This document shows, in pieces, positions 8,686-15,926 of a DNA stretch of 32,000 nucleotides. Both the position numbers and the translations under genes were made by a program. This DNA comes from Paramicrosporidium saccamoebae KSL3. Its lineage: Eukaryota; Fungi; Cryptomycota. Under the pieces are notes generated by a model, which was not told where the DNA came from, made no database searches, and saw only the letters and a program-made list of their open reading frames with translations. Every line of letters begins with the position of its first letter. Positions within the stretch are counted from its first letter, which is position 1. The DNA is taken from assembly GCA_002794465.1 (NCBI GenBank), contig MTSL01000213.1, forward strand, positions 139,787-171,786. Reading direction: 5' to 3'.

Positions 8686-9908
8686 CTATTCAGCCGTGTC
8701 TTTACAATGACAAAAGAACAACCGACTCGTTTTATCCCATACCGATCGCATTGAATACTGATTGCCCCGCGGTACTATGAACTGACTGCCAGTGCCCACC
8801 ACAAAACTGGTCCCATGGATGGTCACTTCCACCGTCCCCTCCACCACAAAGAACACCTACAGATTAAAAGCGATAGAGTGCAGTACAAGCGCGTGTTTTG
8901 AAGAGTTACGGGTAGGCTTTGAAGAGCCCGCGGGAAATTCAAGGATCCCCGAGGACAAAAAGGTTCCCTCTGTGAATATTGTCTGGATGGCGAAATCTTC
9001 ATTTTTGACCGTTGTCGTTTCTACCTGATCTGGACCCAGAGCCAGCACTACACATCAGCCATTAACCATCTTCTTACGTTTCTCGCACTCCCGATGACTG
9101 TCATAATCCATAATCTTGGCCTCCACAGACACCTTGGACTTGAACCCCGCCGTGGACAGCTTCTCAGTAGTCTGTCTCTTTCTCCCCCTACTTCTGCCTC
9201 GGGTTGTGGCTTTGATGGGTGTATCTTCCCCTCCCCTCACCACGTCTACGATTACTGGAACGCGACTGGACAATCTCCTCCCATACACAACGCGCTCATT
9301 TTTCCAATACTTTAGAGGTTCAATCTTTTGTCTCTTACTCTTCCGTCCATTGTCGTCATATAAAATCACAGCCTCGTTTCTGCGGGGAGCCTTTTTCTTC
9401 ACCGTCCTCTTTTTCGCAGCCACAATTCGAGGTTCTTCTCTTATCGGCTCAGGCTCGCTATCGGTAGCAGGTCCAGGCAGGTCCTGGGGCATCATATCCT
9501 CCATATAGTCCGGTTCGCCTTGAATGGACGCCTCCAAACCCAATTCCGACCGCAGCGAACTTTTGATCCTTGGAGAACTCCTCACTCCTCCTCTTGGCGA
9601 ACTCTTTGATTTTGGCGAACTGCTCTTTACTAATTTCATTGTGGGACGGAAGGTGACTTCGTTATCGTCATCAGTCATTACATTTTCTCGATCAACGTCC
9701 ACGTCCTCCACACTCCAGGTGCGCGTTTCGGGCCGACGCGGACTGGCAGCAAAGTAATTGTCGAGGTCATCAAATCCCTCCTCGTCCTTTGGCGCTGTCC
9801 GAACCAAAGCCTCCTTTCTGCTCAATGTCGCAAAACGACGGTTGAACAGGGATGTACGTCGCATTCCCTACAGATTAGCCCCTTCCAATAGTGTCGTACG
9901 GTCGACAT
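8686..9908 (-). CDS. MIF2: Kinetochore protein Mif2/CENP-C, 4 exons inferred
   Basis: GFDDLDNYF N-terminal motif; CENP-C motif RKSKRQKIEPLKYWKNERVVY; spliced C-terminal cupin SSGILEFP...VFFVVEGTVEVTI...FIVPRGNQYSM...LFFCHC. Short first exon ATG TCG ACC at 9908 followed by a 32-nt intron. Confidence 0.9.
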
Positions 9909-10400: not shown

Positions 10401-10508
10401 ATCTCTGTATAAAGAGCTGGTACTGATCAATAGGAGTGACTAGTCCATCGTAGTACAGTGAGTAGTGAGTGATCAGTGGTGCGAGTGACCAATGCACAAG
10501 TGATTAAC

Positions 10509-10612
10509 AATGTGGGTGACTAGTACTTTGGGTTCTAAAAAATGTGGGTGACTAGTACTTTGGGTTCTTAACAATGCGGGTGGCTAGTACTTTGGGTTCT
10601 TAATAATGCGGG
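10509..10612. repeat. 32-bp minisatellite x3 plus partial copy
   Basis: AATGTGGGTGACTAGTACTTTGGGTTCT-AAAA/TAAC/TAAT; units start at 10509, 10541, 10573. Confidence 0.9.
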
Positions 10613-10781
10613 CGAATATTGGCCATCAGTTTGGGTGACTAGCTGTCCCTCAGTATACATTGTTCGATAACTAATCGTGTTTGTAACGGTCCATCAGGCA
10701 TCACAATTAATTGTCTCGCTCAACACGCCATCCAATCACACCACTTACCCTAAATTTGCGCGGGCCGGGGGCCGAACCCTA

Positions 10782-12077
10782 ATGGCCGTCACAACACGTA
10801 GTCGTACCCGTCGTGTCTCCTCTCCTCGCCGTGGAGTGTTCCCGTCTAATAGTGATACATTGAAATCGCGTCGTTCTGTGTCTCCTTCACGCCGGGATGT
10901 CTCTCCCCACCGGAATTTTTCACCTAACCGAAAGGCCTCTCCACACCGGAATGTCTCTCCTCGTCGGAGTGTTTCTCCCCACCAAAAGGTCTCTCCTAGT
11001 CGACATGTCTCTCTTAGTCGAAATGTTACCTCTCGTCGTGGCAAGGCCTCTACTAACCGCCGTAGCTCTCCCGTGTCTACTGCGCCTTTAACTTCTACTC
11101 CCCCAAGTAGCCTTCCATTTGGAGCCTGGCTGGGTCGATTGGTGGGTCGTGGTGATTCAGTCAAGCCCCACTCATCAAAAACTCCAGAGAGACGAGTAGA
11201 ATTTAGATCGTCGGATGATGACTTGGAAGTCTCTAGTACCTCTGAGGAAGCATTGTTCTCCGATTCCAGTGAGGAGAGCGAGTCTGAGACAACTTTACGA
11301 TCCGCCTCAAAGTCAACTTCTACCCGATCCGCCTCAAAGCACAACGCCCCGAAATCCGGCTCTTATGGCAGCAGTCCCCAAAAGAAACAAACAAAGTCGG
11401 GGGCTGCACGTCGTCCCCGCGGTATCAAGGAATGTGACCGTAAGATGTTACATAAAATGATCAGCAAAGACGATGATCCCGCGATCATTATCAATGCCGC
11501 CAACTATCGTCCCACGAAGCGTCGTCCCCGTCTGCCATGGACTCCCTCCGAGGTCATGTTCCTCCGGATGGGCGTGGAGCGCTTCGGGATGGCCTGGGCC
11601 GATATCCTCAAATGCAATGAGTACAAGTTCCATCCTCATCGGGTGCAAATCGATCTAAAGGACAAGTGGCGCAATCTGACCAATTATCGTCCCTATGGGT
11701 CTCATGGGAAGCGGACCTTTGTGCTGCTTGATGCGGATCACAACACCATAGTCCGTCCCGACACTCTGAAGCCGTATCGCTTCAATAACCGTTGGCCACG
11801 CGATGCTGCCCTAAAGGCCGCATCCAAAACTGAATTCTATGACGTCGGCCGCACACATACGACAATCCGCGTTCGTGAGATTCTTCCCGATGAAAATGCA
11901 TCGTCTGTCCTTGTGCATGTCTACGAGGGCACCCGAAAACGGTGCACTGCCCCGCCCCACCTCAATGAGCTTCGCATCCGCCAAGTTTGGCAAAGCGATG
12001 TGCGCAAAACCCACGAAGAACGGCACGTCAGCAAGGCAGACTTGGTACAAATTGAGCAAGATGCTTGTCGTCTCTGA
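10782..12077 (+). CDS. Telobox-type Myb/SANT protein with N-terminal SPxR repeats and C-terminal MC1-like domain
   Basis: PWTPSEVMFLRMGVERFGMAWADIL...HRVQIDLKDKWRNL is a TRF-type telobox Myb (11535-11678). The C-terminal 100 aa match remembered MC1 motifs. First ATG of the ORF is at 10782. Confidence 0.8.
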   Translation: MAVTTRSRTRRVSSPRRGVFPSNSDTLKSRRSVSPSRRDVSPHRNFSPNRKASPHRNVSPRRSVSPHQKVSPSRHVSLSRNVTSRRGKASTNRRSSPVSTAPLTSTPPSSLPFGAWLGRLVGRGDSVKPHSSKTPERRVEFRSSDDDLEVSSTSEEALFSDSSEESESETTLRSASKSTSTRSASKHNAPKSGSYGSSPQKKQTKSGAARRPRGIKECDRKMLHKMISKDDDPAIIINAANYRPTKRRPRLPWTPSEVMFLRMGVERFGMAWADILKCNEYKFHPHRVQIDLKDKWRNLTNYRPYGSHGKRTFVLLDADHNTIVRPDTLKPYRFNNRWPRDAALKAASKTEFYDVGRTHTTIRVREILPDENASSVLVHVYEGTRKRCTAPPHLNELRIRQVWQSDVRKTHEERHVSKADLVQIEQDACRL

Positions 12078-12343: not shown

Positions 12344-14430
12344 TTAGGAAGTGGGCGTGCGTCTTTTGCGAGCATGGTCTGGTAGACGGGTGAATGATTT
12401 GGTTCGGCGTTGATCAATTCCATCGGCATTGGTCGGGGTGCTCCGATTACCCACATTGCTCAGACTCCTCACAGACAACACTGGGGACAAATGTCTTCTA
12501 ATGTCCACAGTGGGGTCAAGCATAATGTCGGCGTCACTATCGTTAAAGTGCTCCTCGATGGCTTCCTTGGTGCCATTCGTAGGATCCACCCTAGAGAGCT
12601 CCAGCAGACGATCACGGATTGTTAGTAAAATCTCATCAAGAGTTAATTCTGCCTGCAGATGACTTCGGATCATGGAAATGCCTACTGGTTATAGCAACTA
12701 TGCAATGTACTTGGCCAGGTAGCCTTCTCGCCTCGATGAACAGACTCGAGGATGGCATCCAGAGGACGGTCCACAAACATGTGGAGAATATCTCCCCATG
12801 CCAGGTTGGGGATAATAGTAATGTCGCCATAGTATTTTTGACTCAGAACGCTCTTTAACATTTGACAGGCACGGGGCATTATCCCCAGCCCCGATATTTG
12901 ATCCAGACGATACTTTAGCTCAGAGCGGATCAGATACATAACCTTGTGATTAAAGGAACGAAAGGTCGTGTCCCTGACTGCATGTTTCACAAAGGGATAG
13001 ATATGAGGATTAACTTGACTCACAATAAAGTGGTTCACATTGAACAGCTCAGCCAGGCGGTTCATTGGCAGATCATTCTCCACCGACCCATCACACCAAA
13101 GATCACCCGTGACATTCCACGGAACAATGTCGCCACGTCGGTTTTTTGCCAACAGCGGTGCAGACTCATACAGGGCTGGCACTGCACACGATGCCACCAC
13201 TGCACTCCAGACGAGCACATCAGGTGAGGTGATATAGTTCAACAGTCGAGGCATATCGTACATTGAGGTGGAGCTGACTGCGATATTCAGTACACGATTG
13301 GTCTTTTGATATGCTTCCAGGAATGTAATATCTCCTATGGTCTGGCGAAGGCTCTTCTTCAAGACTTTGCCATCAAATATGACCCCATGGCTGACTAGAC
13401 GAGCAATTTTTTTGCTCCATGGATAGACCCAGGATCCTCGCTGCTCCTCAGGCACAGCCTCCTCTAGCAAATGAGTATTAATGCCTTCCATTTTCATCAG
13501 ACGGGGAAACTCTTCATCAGTATGACAACAGGCAATTGCAGCCATAATCGAGCCAGAAGAGGCCCCCGCAATAATCCTCGGAAGAAGCCCATTCTCAAAC
13601 AGCGCCTTGAGCACTCCAATATGATAGACACCCAAGGAGGCGCCACCAGAGAGCAGCAACGCCGTGTTTCCCAGTGAGTGTCGCAGATCTTTGAAAAAGT
13701 CCATCTGGGCTTTCAACTCGACAGGATTGGTTACCGCAGTAATTCGACTGGCAAGAATGTTTAGGAGGTTCACTACCTCGACATTAAAGTCTTCAATCAA
13801 ATGCTTCGTCCCAATGTTGCAGTGCTGAAAGTTTTTTGCACCATCAATCCCGCCGAAATTTCTTATCAAACCTACATATGTAAGGCGGTATACACAATGG
13901 CACTGGTCCGGAGAAGAAAAGAAATGGCAGCAGCATCTCCCATTTCATGGGCACTCTCGAGCTGTTGTAACCGCGCCTGAACTAGTTCATAGTCGTAATC
14001 CCCAGATCTTGGATCCCTCTTCCACTCATTCTTTCCTACAACATCAGACCATTCAGTCTCTAGAGTGCCTCCCAAACGGTCCAGCTCTGAGGCTGCCGCT
14101 GCCCATTCGTCATAGTCATTTGCCTGCTCCAGCCGTGCCCTCCATACGCGTCTCTCCTGAATCGGGGTGATAACCCCATTATAGGCCACCTGAAACATTA
14201 GGATAAGGTTAGAGCCAAACCTTCACCCAGAAACTGGCAACTTCCCAACAAACGCTACCCACGCCACCCACGAGTGACAGCATCACGCCAAAGAAGGAGT
14301 GAAGCACTACCGTTTCCACTATCATTACTGAGGGGAGGAGGATGGGTACGTTGGTGGATGCGGCCGGTGACTCCGAGGGGAGCGCGTCGTCGTCTTTCAC
14401 CATTCTGCATGAACCGAAGGGGCCAATCAT
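12344..14430 (-). CDS. Patatin-family triacylglycerol lipase (Tgl3/4/5, SDP1-like), 5 exons inferred; start 14430 or 14403
   Basis: YDEWAAAASELD, DYDYELV, LLRTS-LIRN, GTKHLIEDF, LGNTALLLSGGASLG, GASSGS (GxSxG), WCDGSVENDLP, HFIVSQVNPH, YYGDITIIP, GEKATWP. Confidence 0.92.
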
Positions 14431-15628: not shown

Positions 15629-15926
15629 GAATATCAGCCACATTCTAGGGTTGCCCAAATTAGATCTTATTCGGAATATTAATAATCCTTATCAATTTGA
15701 GATTGATTGGTGAGAGATTTGTCGAGACTGTGAAAGGTCTGATGGAAAGTTGGAGACACGCAATGTGTGGCTTGATCTGGCTATCATTATTTCAGTAAGT
15801 CTATCCACCCATTAGAAATAAAAGCGACCAAGTCGATGGCAATTACCCGGAAAGGACTATAATAACTTTTTCACTACGCGGCCCAACTTGGTGGTAATTC
15901 TAGATTAAGTGACTTGATCGTGATGC

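What the first reader, a model, noticed from the sequence alone, without database searches (positions are those of the whole stretch)
10782..12077. Telobox-Myb protein fused to an archaeal MC1-like DNA-bending domain
Seen: directly after the telobox Myb (LKDKWRNL, 11535-11678), the region 11709-12010 reads KRTFVLLDADHN...RFNNRWPRDAALKAAS...TTIRVRE...VHVYEG...APPH...VWQSDVRK. Known, recalled from memory: Methanosarcina chromosomal protein MC1 reads TRNFVLRDEDGN...FTGKQPRQAALKAAN...IIRLRE..KKVHVF...APKN...SKPFVKK, and MC1-like proteins also occur in some large DNA viruses. Five motif blocks are colinear. Inference: a sequence-specific telomere-type reader is joined to a prokaryote/virus-type DNA-bending module, possibly a non-histone chromatin or telomere compaction system acquired by lateral transfer. 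I cannot confirm that this architecture is undescribed.
Basis: partly seen in the sequence, partly recalled or inferred. Interest (0 to 1): 0.85.

Follow-up and report, generated by a model that had tools for sequence, protein, structure and literature searches.

The report
Telomere-type Myb fused to MC1 domain
A fungus-like parasite of amoebae, and other single-celled relatives of animals and fungi, encode a protein that joins a telomere-repeat-reading Myb domain to an MC1 DNA-bending domain so far reported only from archaea, some bacteria and giant viruses.

Summary
Window 10782-12077 (+) is one uninterrupted 431-aa ORF. A TRF-type "telobox" Myb (aa 246-301) is followed after 8 residues by an MC1 domain (aa 310-414). 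The MC1 call rests on Pfam PF05854 at 30.6 bits (cut-off 23), hhalign against canonical MC1 at 98.75% probability (E 1.5e-16), MC1 as the only PDB sequence hit, and an AF2 model (pLDDT 92.5) with the MC1 strand and helix order. Foldseek matched the model to giant-virus MC1 proteins but not to the NMR structure 1T23.

The window is Paramicrosporidium saccamoebae (Rozellomycota) nuclear DNA. The fusion is not a local oddity. About 80 cluster representatives out of 1.84 billion share the domain, and nearly all full-length ones carry Myb plus MC1 as one module. Named members include Capsaspora, Pigoraptor, Chromosphaera, Entomophthora and Amphiamblys. This argues against a recent lateral transfer.

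The MC1 bending residues are conserved (R25 = R340, K86 = K409). I infer, but have not shown, a monomeric, sequence-anchored DNA bender at TTAGGG-type sites. Telomeres and promoter boxes both remain possible targets.

A pair of CCCTAA boxes is conserved just upstream of the start codon. No paper in the searched library describes this architecture. The closest known analogue is the plant single-Myb-histone (TRB) family.

The parts
10732..10782 (+). Conserved promoter / 5' block: CCAAT (10732-36), telobox-1 ACCCTAAA (10747-54), TTTGCGCGGG (10755-64), telobox-2 AACCCTAA (10775-82, whose last A is the A of the ATG)
   Evidence: Only 6 CCCTAA occur in the 32 kb window, and two lie here. The CCAAT-to-GCGGG block is 30/33 identical to the orthologous upstream region in L005, against 40% in the flank. 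Box 2 is 7/7 identical, the box-to-box spacing of 29 bp is the same, and these are the only two CCCTAA in the 5.85 kb of L005.
10782..12077 (+). Complete coding sequence, 431 aa plus stop, no intron
   Evidence: ORF listing and sequence. Identical to deposited protein P0001 on GCA_002794465.1 MTSL01000213.1.
10881..11027 (+). Basic hexapeptide repeat array S-P-x-R-x-V (aa 34-82) within a disordered N-terminal region (aa 1-240, pI 11.6)
   Evidence: Tandem Repeats Finder reports periods 18 and 54. Eight consecutive SPxRxx-type units (the last two SPHQKV-type/SLSRNV variants) plus one isolated SPRRGV at aa 14; nine full [ST]-P-x-[KR] sites in the protein. Reading these as CDK sites or SPKK-type minor-groove motifs is inference.
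11205..11294 (+). Acidic, serine-rich patch (aa 142-171, DDDLEVSSTSEEALFSDSSEESESE)
   Evidence: Read directly from the translation. Function not tested.
11517..11684 (+). TRF-type (telobox) Myb domain, aa 246-301, with basic N-terminal arm KRRPR and helix-3 DLKDKWRNL
   Evidence: PDB sequence hits are all telomere-repeat binders. The AF2 model has three helices. Foldseek's best hits are hTRF2, zebrafish TRF2 and hTRF1 Myb domains (several bound to telomeric DNA), with target TM up to 0.83 and probability 1.0. Pfam Myb scores 16.3 bits, below its cut-off of 24.4, for this protein alone. 39 of 67 relatives match Pfam Myb at E<=0.01.
11685..11708 (+). Short conserved linker (aa 302-309, YRPYGSHG); Y302 and Y305 are nearly invariant
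   Evidence: Alignment A1. High pLDDT through the linker in the two-domain model, pTM 0.71.
11709..12023 (+). MC1-type DNA-bending domain, aa 310-414: b1-b2-alpha-b3-b4-arm-b5. Key residues R311, R337, P339, R340, K345, L397, K409
   Evidence: Pfam PF05854 above cut-off. hhalign 98.75%. MC1 1t23 is the only PDB sequence hit of the domain profile. AF2 pLDDT 92.5 with the same element order as published MC1. BFVD Foldseek hits to giant-virus MC1 proteins at probability 0.99-1.0. pI 9.9.
12033..12074 (+). Extra C-terminal helix (aa 418-431) that stand-alone MC1 lacks
   Evidence: AF2 secondary structure H112-124 of the 125-aa model.

Best explanation
This is an ordinary nuclear gene of Paramicrosporidium saccamoebae. 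It encodes a member of a conserved, so far undescribed opisthokont family of two-module DNA-binding proteins.

Shown:
- A TRF/telobox-type Myb domain is joined by a short conserved linker to a true homologue of the chromosomal protein MC1.
- The pair behaves as a single conserved unit across many lineages.

Inferred mechanism:
- The Myb helix-3 (LKDKWR) and its basic N-terminal arm anchor the protein on a TTAGGG/CCCTAA-type motif.
- The adjacent MC1 domain binds the neighbouring DNA non-specifically and kinks it sharply. It would use the conserved equivalents of MC1 Arg25 (R340) and Lys86 (K409) to neutralise phosphates, and a hydrophobic arm residue (L397 here, Phe in most relatives, Trp74 in MC1) as a wedge.
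- The MC1 module would thus replace the second Myb, or the TRFH dimerisation domain, that other telomeric Myb proteins need. The result would be a monomeric, sequence-targeted architectural factor.
- The basic SPxR-repeat tail would add affinity and cell-cycle control.

The sites of action are telomeric repeats, promoter-proximal telobox-like elements (including its own promoter), or both.
For: Domain identities.

One module: a Myb+MC1 core HMM matches nearly every full-length relative in a single envelope. 39 of 67 representatives match Pfam Myb and 34 of 67 match Pfam MC1 at E<=0.01.

Conservation of MC1 DNA-contact residues: the hhalign register compared with the published MC1-DNA contacts gives R4=R311, K22=R337, P24=P339, R25=R340, K30=K345 and K86=K409. 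All of these are invariant in the 32-sequence alignment A1 except K409, which is nearly invariant (at least 90%).

Basic character: the domain has pI 9.9 and the family median is 9.6, against 10.32 for MC1.

Nuclear eukaryotic context: Sec2/Rabin8, FancD2, DBR1, UCH and patatin genes surround it.

Vertical history: named members come from Filasterea, Ichthyosporea, Entomophthoromycota, Microsporidia and Rozellomycota. Holozoan MC1 domains form a 99% bootstrap clade. The gene lies convergent with a patatin/DUF3336 gene both in the window and in a 38%-identical homologue's locus. One orthologue has an intron inside the Myb domain.

Target motif: two CCCTAA boxes lie in a phylogenetically footprinted block at the gene's own start.
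Against: No DNA binding, bending or localisation was tested; the function is entirely inferred.

Foldseek of both models against the PDB did not retrieve the MC1 NMR structures 1T23/2KHL/2NBJ. The viral structural matches have modest E-values (8e-3 to 0.1) and TM scores of about 0.45-0.53.

The intercalating Trp74 and Pro72 of MC1 are not conserved; here they are Leu and Asn.

The window protein's Myb domain is below Pfam's cut-off on its own.

The telomere repeat of this organism was not seen in the window.

Several named relatives (Capsaspora, Pigoraptor, Chromosphaera, Entomophthora, Amphiamblys) do not hit Pfam MC1 by themselves. They are linked only through the family profile, at E 4e-15 to 1e-5.
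Confidence: 0.6

Rival explanations
1. The protein is mainly a promoter factor rather than a telomere protein. It would read the ACCCTA(A) 'CCC-like' element that sits just upstream of start codons in Rozellomycota and Microsporidia, bend the core promoter or keep it nucleosome-free like a general regulatory factor, and regulate its own gene.
For: Two conserved CCCTAA boxes lie within 35 bp of its own ATG, footprinted against an orthologue from a genome of very different GC content (47% vs 60%). ACCCT also lies within 25 nt of the ATG of two other window genes, at 15643 and 24329. Microsporidian genes carry a CCC-like motif plus an AAATTT-like signal next to the start codon, with published examples such as AAAAATTTACCCTAAAT (PMC2803860). 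The nearest non-family Myb domains are plant single-Myb-histone/TRB proteins, which by established knowledge bind promoter telo-boxes as well as telomeres.
Against: Only a handful of genes could be inspected and their start codons are not verified. The motif may be bound by a different factor. L001 (the P0020 gene) has four boxes scattered over the 1.5 kb upstream rather than a proximal pair, and L002 (the P0029 gene) has none. Canonical microsporidia, which show the CCC motif most clearly, did not yield a Myb-MC1 homologue; only the metchnikovellid Amphiamblys did. The two roles are not mutually exclusive.
Confidence: 0.3
2. This is a recent lateral acquisition: Paramicrosporidium, living inside amoeba nuclei, picked up an MC1 gene from a giant virus or an archaeon, and it fused to a resident Myb gene.
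For: MC1-like proteins are packaged by amoeba-infecting giant viruses (bioRxiv 10.1101/2024.02.22.580433). The best structural matches of the model are giant-virus proteins. The host of this parasite is an amoeba (PMC5701793).
Against: The fused module occurs in free-living and parasitic opisthokonts far from Rozellomycota. It has a conserved linker and a single HMM envelope, a holozoan clade at 99% bootstrap, conserved synteny and an intron in one orthologue. Local base composition is not atypical (GC 0.49-0.53 over 10-12 kb, within the window's 0.43-0.53 range; genome 47%). No NRWPR[DE]AA-type relative exists in 2.9 million viral contigs.
Confidence: 0.05
3. The MC1-like region keeps the fold but has lost DNA bending. 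It would serve as a protein-interaction or dimerisation module for a conventional Myb factor.
For: The Trp74/Pro72 wedge of MC1 is replaced. The family carries variable insertions between b3 and b4 and an extra C-terminal helix. Foldseek gives no match to solved MC1.
Against: The residues that neutralise DNA phosphates in MC1 (R25, K22, K30, K86) are invariant or nearly so across the family, and the domain stays basic. The wedge position keeps a hydrophobic residue (Phe or Leu). Mimivirus gp275, which has Lys at the Arg25 position, still condenses DNA.
Confidence: 0.1
4. The finding is an artefact: a chance similarity, or two genes wrongly read as one ORF.
For: The Pfam score is only moderately above threshold for the single sequence.
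Against: hhalign E is 1.5e-16 over the full MC1 length. The ORF is continuous with an 8-residue linker. At least 60 relatives have the same layout. The deposited annotation gives the same 431-aa product.
Confidence: 0.02

Closest known systems
Archaeal chromosomal protein MC1 (Methanosarcina; PDB 1T23/2KHL/2NBJ; Pfam PF05854)
   Same: It is homologous over the whole 93-residue protein (hhalign 98.75%). It has the same b1-b2-alpha-b3-b4-arm-b5 order, the same PR(Q/D)AALKA helix with the bending Arg25, the same VxK(K) at Lys86, and a basic pI.
   Different: MC1 is a small stand-alone, abundant, non-specific nucleoid protein. Here the fold is one domain of a 431-aa eukaryotic nuclear protein tethered to a sequence-specific Myb. 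It also has insertions in the b3-b4 region, Leu or Phe instead of Trp74, no Pro72, and an extra C-terminal helix.
Giant-virus MC1-like proteins (e.g. mimivirus gp275/R252; chlorovirus, Marseillevirus-MAG, Tupanvirus, Yasminevirus proteins)
   Same: They carry the MC1 fold in a eukaryote-associated setting, often with disordered extensions. They are the best structural matches of the model.
   Different: The viral proteins have no Myb domain and act as virion genome condensers. The NRWPRDAALK signature of the opisthokont family was not found in viral contigs.
Plant single-Myb-histone / TRB proteins (Myb telobox + linker-histone H1/H5 globular domain)
   Same: They have the same logic and the same order: an N-terminal telomere-type Myb followed by a non-specific architectural chromatin domain. 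Their Myb domains are the nearest non-family hits of the Myb-MC1 profile (E about 1e-12).
   Different: The architectural module is an H1/H5 winged helix (PF00538), not MC1, so there is no homology in that half. TRBs also have a C-terminal coiled coil.
TRF1/TRF2 (vertebrates), Taz1/Tbf1/Teb1 (fungi), plant TRP/TBP1
   Same: The Myb domain is of this telobox class by sequence and by predicted structure. TRF1 and TRF2 also bend or wrap telomeric DNA.
   Different: No TRFH dimerisation domain or second Myb was detected in the window protein. Bending would come from a covalently attached MC1 domain rather than from dimer geometry.

Membership tests
MC1 (PF05854, non-histone chromosomal protein MC1) | Match to the curated family profile above its gathering score | tested here: met
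   27.1 bits for the whole protein and 30.6 bits for the domain alone, against a cut-off of 23, covering profile positions 2-92 of 96. 34 of 67 relatives also match at E<=0.01, best 7e-24. Profile-profile probability against canonical MC1 is 98.75%, E 1.5e-16.
MC1 (PF05854) | MC1 fold: b1-b2-alpha-b3-b4-(arm)-b5 pseudo-barrel | tested here: inconclusive
   The AF2 model (pLDDT 92.5) has exactly this element order, in register with the published MC1 elements. Foldseek finds giant-virus MC1-annotated models at probability 0.99-1.0, query TM 0.41-0.53 and target TM up to 0.67. Foldseek against the PDB did not return 1T23/2KHL/2NBJ. A direct superposition could not be run.
MC1 (PF05854) | DNA-contact and bending residues: Arg25, Lys22, Lys30, Lys86, and the Pro72/Trp74 wedge | tested here: inconclusive
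   R25=R340, K22=R337, P24=P339 and K30=K345 are invariant in alignment A1 and K86=K409 nearly so (>=90%). Trp74 is Leu397 here and Phe in most relatives, and Pro72 is not kept.
MC1 (PF05854) | Small, stand-alone, basic nucleoid-associated protein | tested here: not met
   It is a domain within a 431-aa multidomain protein. The basic character is retained (pI 9.9). I therefore file it as an MC1-domain protein, not as an MC1 orthologue.
MC1 (PF05854) | Sharp DNA bending or compaction and a preference for distorted DNA | not testable with these tools
   Needs EMSA, circularisation or AFM.
Telobox / TRF-type Myb | Single Myb repeat with the helix-3 motif (V/I)DLKDKWR(N/T) and a basic N-terminal arm | tested here: met
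   IDLKDKWRNL is at aa 290-299 and KRRPR at aa 246-250. D291-K295, R297 and N298 are invariant and W296 nearly invariant in the family.
Telobox / TRF-type Myb | Closest solved relatives are telomere-repeat binders rather than c-Myb or SANT | tested here: met
   The single sequence hits plant TRP/TBP1 at 1e-5 and TRF1 at 3e-3. The family profile hits hTRF1 at 8e-16, against c-Myb at 0.5. Foldseek's top hits are hTRF2, zebrafish TRF2 and hTRF1 Myb domains, with target TM up to 0.83.
Telobox / TRF-type Myb | Pfam Myb_DNA-binding above its gathering score | tested here: inconclusive
   The window protein scores 16.3 bits against a cut-off of 24.4. 39 of 67 relatives match at E<=0.01, best 8e-21.
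Telobox / TRF-type Myb | Specific binding to TTAGGG-type repeats | not testable with these tools
TRF1/TRF2/Taz1/Tbf1 orthologue | TRFH dimerisation domain N-terminal to the Myb | tested here: not met
   No Pfam family other than MC1 and Myb was found at E<=10. The N-terminal 240 aa are low-complexity SPxR repeats and an acidic patch.
Plant single-Myb-histone / TRB | Linker-histone H1/H5 globular domain (PF00538) after the Myb | tested here: not met
   There is no PF00538 match, and the position is occupied by MC1. It is an analogue in architecture only.

The most novel reading that the evidence does not exclude
Myb-MC1 proteins would be an ancient opisthokont class of sequence-targeted DNA benders. 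In this reading a fold thought to be absent from cellular eukaryotes does the job that dimerisation does in TRF proteins. In Rozellomycota and early Microsporidia the protein would be the long-sought trans-factor for the ACCCT(A)/AAATTT core-promoter signal next to start codons. Eukaryotic hosts, rather than archaea, could then be the source (or a recipient) of the MC1 genome-condensing proteins of giant viruses.
Probability: 0.2. Interest if true: 0.85.

Novelty: new variant of a known kind. Interest (0 to 1): 0.68.

Why it matters
First, it places the MC1 fold in cellular eukaryotes, including Capsaspora and other close unicellular relatives of animals. Published surveys stated that MC1 occurs in archaea and eukaryotic viruses "but not in eukaryotic proteomes" (PMC5671483) and that no algal host homologue could be found for the giant-virus proteins. 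Most named members are annotated only as Myb-like, because they miss the Pfam MC1 model on their own. This explains why the family was overlooked.

Second, it gives a new solution to an old design problem: how a single Myb repeat achieves stable, architecture-changing binding. Plants added an H1 domain and vertebrates added TRFH dimerisation. These lineages added an archaeal-type bender.

Third, it offers a concrete candidate and a testable site (ACCCTAAATTT) for telomere and core-promoter biology in Rozellomycota and Microsporidia, where the transcription machinery is poorly known. It also gives a tractable model in Capsaspora.

Tried and rejected
- Foldseek of the MC1-domain model and of the two-domain model against the PDB gave no MC1 hit. 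I treat this as a failure of sensitivity on a small NMR structure with a floppy arm, not as evidence against homology, because sequence profiles and BFVD matches agree. It remains an unmet structural test.
- My first guess of a diatom or stramenopile origin (telobox, compact genes) was wrong. DBR1 relatives pointed to early fungi, and the contig look-up identified Paramicrosporidium saccamoebae.
- The Aravind-lab paper on archaeal chromosomal proteins (PMC5906684) does not mention MC1, and the P. saccamoebae genome paper does not mention MC1, Myb or telomeres.
- Scanning IMG/VR for the family signature NRWPR[DE]AA found nothing. The canonical-MC1 scan found 8 viral and 260 archaeal/bacterial-genome loci, with the top 80 kept almost all labelled Methanosarcinales (one labelled Bacteroidales) and so too narrow for rooting.
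- A neighbour-joining tree on 98 columns resolved only shallow clades. It does not decide between an archaeal, viral or vertical origin.
- Teloboxes upstream of more distant homologues were inconsistent. L001 has four boxes scattered within the 1.5 kb upstream and L002/L003 have none nearby. Autoregulation is therefore conserved only within the Paramicrosporidium-like clade.
- The bacterial promoter/terminator scan is irrelevant to a eukaryote and showed nothing.
- The antisense 199-aa ORF 10745-11344 was not examined further and is probably a by-product of the repeat-rich coding strand.
Full report
**What is in the sequence**

Window 10782-12077 (+) is a single uninterrupted ORF of 431 codons plus a stop. 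It is identical to a deposited protein, P0001, from NCBI/UniRef, on a 188-kb contig.

LKDKWRNL is aa 292-299 (nt 11655-11678), and KRTFVLL starts the second domain at aa 310 (nt 11709).

The surrounding genes are ordinary eukaryotic nuclear genes: a Sec2/Rabin8 GEF, an amino-acid transporter, a patatin lipase with DUF3336, FancD2, two UCH proteases and DBR1.

The contig look-up gives GCA_002794465.1, scaffold MTSL01000213.1. Accession MTSL00000000 is the genome of Paramicrosporidium saccamoebae, a rozellomycotan intranuclear parasite of amoebae (PMC5701793). That genome is 7.3 Mb with 47% GC, which fits the window. The genome paper mentions neither MC1, Myb nor telomeres.

**The Myb domain**

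For aa 246-301, the best PDB sequence matches are exclusively telomere-repeat binders. Plant TRP/TBP1 scores 1e-5 to 5e-4, followed by TRF1, TRF2 and zebrafish Terfa.

With a profile of the family, human TRF1 scores 8e-16 and c-Myb only 0.5.

The AlphaFold model of aa 243-420 (pLDDT 94.5) has the three helices. Its best Foldseek hits are hTRF2, zebrafish TRF2 and hTRF1 Myb domains (several solved on telomeric DNA), with target TM up to 0.83 and probability 1.0.

The helix-3 residues D291, L292, K293, D294, K295, R297 and N298 are invariant across the 32 aligned relatives in A1, and W296 is nearly so. The arm RRxR precedes the domain.

On its own, the window protein is below Pfam's Myb cut-off (16.3 against 24.4 bits). 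Of 67 relatives, 39 match at E<=0.01.

**The MC1 domain**

For aa 310-414, Pfam PF05854 scores 27.1 bits for the whole protein and 30.6 bits (E 4e-7) for the region alone. The cut-off is 23, and profile positions 2-92 of 96 are covered.

A 20-sequence profile of this region finds exactly one thing among 177,635 PDB sequences: MC1 1t23 (E 0.023). In 1.84 billion cluster representatives the same profile reaches canonical stand-alone MC1-like proteins. One is P0103, 96 aa, which itself scores 70.8 bits on Pfam MC1.

- against the aligned segment printed;
- against every residue number quoted in PMC6776556;
- by matches of up to 94% identity (full length in most of the best loci) in Methanosarcina genomes;
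- by reproducing the published pI of 10.32.

hhalign of the family region against this sequence plus three stand-alone relatives gives probability 98.75% and E 1.5e-16, over 94 columns covering MC1 residues 3-92.

In that register, the residues the NMR complex identifies as essential are conserved:

| MC1 residue | Window residue |
|---|---|
| Arg4 | R311 |
| Lys22 | R337 |
| Pro24 | P339 |
| Arg25 | R340 |
| Lys30 | K345 |
| Lys86 | K409 |

All are invariant in the family except K409, which is nearly invariant. The intercalating Trp74 is Leu397 here and Phe in most relatives. Pro72 is not kept.

The AF2 model of aa 307-431 has pLDDT 92.5 and pTM 0.79. It has strands and a helix in exactly the MC1 order, plus one extra C-terminal helix.

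Foldseek against predicted viral structures returns giant-virus proteins at probability 0.99-1.0, several annotated as MC1-domain or non-histone chromosomal proteins. These come from Yasminevirus, Faunusvirus, Marseillevirus MAGs, Tupanvirus and ChoanoV1, with query TM 0.41-0.53 and target TM up to 0.67.

Foldseek against the PDB did not return the MC1 NMR entries for either model. That structural test is therefore not met, and I could not run a direct superposition. The domain is basic: pI 9.9, family median 9.6.

**A conserved family, not a one-off**

The single-sequence search found about 30 relatives at 30-46% identity, all with the same layout.

The exhaustive profile search with the MC1 region found only 82 cluster representatives at E<=1e-3, of which 60 are at E<=1e-10. 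A local HMM spanning Myb plus linker plus MC1 matches almost every full-length one in a single continuous envelope.

Named members are:
- Capsaspora owczarzaki CAOG_05071;
- Pigoraptor chileana;
- Chromosphaera perkinsii (an ichthyosporean by my own knowledge; the name is not in the taxonomy copy);
- a EukProt record labelled 'Sdes', which I read as Sphaerothecum destruens;
- Entomophthora muscae, with several Myb repeats before the MC1 part;
- Amphiamblys sp. (Microsporidia);
- one record filed under the moss Sphagnum compactum, which I suspect comes from an associated microbe.

All securely named members are opisthokonts. Most of the family is unnamed metagenomic or SRA data, so a wider distribution is not excluded.

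Several named members do not hit Pfam MC1 alone, which explains their 'Myb-like' annotation.

Several observations point to a long vertical history:
- The holozoan MC1 domains form a clade with 99% bootstrap support in a rough neighbour-joining tree. Deeper nodes are unresolved.
- The gene lies convergent with a patatin/DUF3336 gene both in the window and in the locus of a 38%-identical homologue.
- An orthologue with a 64-68% identical core, from a 60%-GC genome, has a short intron inside the Myb domain.
- No relative carrying the family signature exists in IMG/VR.

I therefore reject a recent lateral transfer into Paramicrosporidium. An ancient transfer, in either direction between viruses, archaea and an early opisthokont, remains open.

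**Other parts of the protein**

The N-terminal 240 residues have pI 11.6. They carry an array of eight consecutive S-P-x-R-x-V-type hexapeptides (aa 34-82; nt 10881-11027; DNA periods 18 and 54), plus one isolated unit at aa 14. The protein has nine full [ST]-P-x-[KR] sites in all. An acidic serine-rich patch follows. Reading these as CDK sites or SPKK-type minor-groove motifs is inference. Relatives also have S/P/K-rich tails, but these are not alignable.

**The promoter**

CCCTAA occurs only six times in 32 kb. Two copies lie at 10748 and 10777, and the second overlaps the ATG.

The orthologue in L005-L007 starts with the same MAVTTRSR. Upstream it has the same block, CCAATCACA..CTTACCCTAAATTTG.GCGGG. 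The block is 30/33 identical, against 40% in the flank and 61% in the first coding columns. The second AACCCTA box is 7/7 identical, with the same 29-bp box spacing. These are the only two CCCTAA in the 5.85 kb of L005.

This is a phylogenetic footprint of the protein's own predicted target motif.

However, ACCCT also lies within 25 nt of two other start codons in the window. Microsporidia are known to carry a 'CCC-like' motif and an 'AAATTT-like' signal next to start codons (PMC2803860). The boxes may therefore be a general core-promoter element rather than an autoregulatory site.

**How it most likely works**

Shown: a telobox Myb and an MC1 homologue are covalently linked by a short, conserved, confidently modelled linker, and the pair is conserved as a unit.

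Inferred:
- The Myb anchors the protein on a TTAGGG/CCCTAA-type site.
- The MC1 domain then binds the neighbouring DNA non-specifically and kinks it, as MC1 does by phosphate neutralisation (Arg25, Lys86) and a hydrophobic wedge.
- It thereby supplies the second DNA contact that other telomeric Myb proteins obtain by dimerisation or a second repeat.
- The outcome is a monomeric, sequence-targeted architectural factor acting at telomeres, at promoter boxes, or at both.

My confidence in the architecture and homology is about 0.95. My confidence in the mechanism as stated is about 0.6.

**Comparison with what is known**

The MC1 half is a member of the MC1 domain family but not an MC1 orthologue, because it is not a small stand-alone nucleoid protein.

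The Myb half is of the TRF/telobox class. It is not a TRF1/TRF2/Taz1/Tbf1 orthologue, because it has no TRFH domain.

The nearest analogue in design is the plant single-Myb-histone/TRB family, which has a telobox Myb followed by an H1/H5 domain. Their Myb domains are also the nearest non-family hits.

**Novelty**

Ten full-text searches found no paper describing a cellular eukaryotic MC1 domain or a Myb-MC1 fusion. One paper states that the fold is absent from eukaryotic proteomes. Another reports that no algal host homologue could be found for giant-virus MC1.

Subscription-only literature was not searchable. The Pfam hit is also precomputed in public databases for some members. The claim is therefore 'apparently undescribed', not 'unknown to databases'. 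I rate it a new variant of a known kind, with interest 0.68.

Noticed in passing
window 10504-10612: A 32-bp tandem repeat (TTAAAAATGCGGGTGACTAGTACTTTGGGTTC) with 3.4 copies and 90% matches lies in the intergenic region upstream of the Myb-MC1 gene. Its 22-bp core occurs nowhere else in the window. GTGACTAG-like fragments continue upstream to about 10440.
   Followed up: partly
window 9055-9864 (-): The divergent neighbour ORF (269 aa, no Pfam hit) contains GRKSKRQKIEPLKYWKNERVVY, which looks like the CENP-C motif as I recall it. In the related locus L005 a gene two genes upstream of the orthologue (COA8 lies between them) hits the CENP-C_C cupin (L005 1843-2262). This is a probable CENP-C/Mif2 gene whose cupin exon is not in this ORF.
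   Followed up: partly
window 15643 (-) and 24329 (-) start codons; also 10775-10782: ACCCT(A) lies within 25 nt upstream of several start codons (CAACCCTAGAATG, TTTACCCTGGG...ATG, GAACCCTAATG). This resembles the microsporidian CCC-like core-promoter motif. About 0.2 such cases would be expected by chance for 15 genes, by my rough estimate.
   Followed up: partly
window 12682-13869 (-); L002 6474-8129; L003 6184-7839: A patatin/DUF3336 lipase gene lies convergent with the Myb-MC1 gene, both in the window and next to a 38%-identical homologue from a 39%-GC metagenomic eukaryote. This is conserved microsynteny.
   Followed up: yes
L005 4930-5010 (also L006, L007): The closest orthologues (core 64-68% identical, locus GC 60%) carry a short intron inside the Myb domain, between ...WTPTEVM and MGVDRFG. 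The gene caller therefore split the gene into 111-aa and 166-aa products.
   Followed up: partly
protein P0107 (NCBI source, unnamed, 773 aa): This relative has two Myb repeats, the MC1-like region and a C-terminal BRCT-like region (RTT107_BRCT_5, E 8e-4, below cut-off). The domain set is reminiscent of Rap1's BRCT plus Myb.
   Followed up: partly
protein P0096 (695 aa): This protein consists of at least ten tandem ~47-residue repeats (RRYALLSEEHQRWVTTADGGTHYCLKN...) that match only the b1-b2 part of the MC1 profile. Its origin and meaning are unknown.
   Followed up: no
Entomophthora muscae proteins P0099, P0229-P0231: Two neighbouring loci on one 380-kb contig (DSO57_1016743 and DSO57_1016747) encode paralogues with three to four Myb repeats before the MC1-like part. 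This is a local duplication with expansion of the Myb array.
   Followed up: no
window 10745-11344 (-): A 199-aa antisense ORF overlaps the repeat-rich 5' part of the gene. It is probably a by-product of the SPxR codon repeats rather than a gene.
   Followed up: no
holozoan members P0078, P0079, P0084, P0089: The filasterean and ichthyosporean proteins share a glycine-rich insertion (G.G..G.GR(V/I)R.P.DAA) just before the MC1 helix. They also replace NRWPRD with R(V/I)R(H/Y/L/S)P(R/G)D. This is a clade-specific variant of the DNA-contact region.
   Followed up: no
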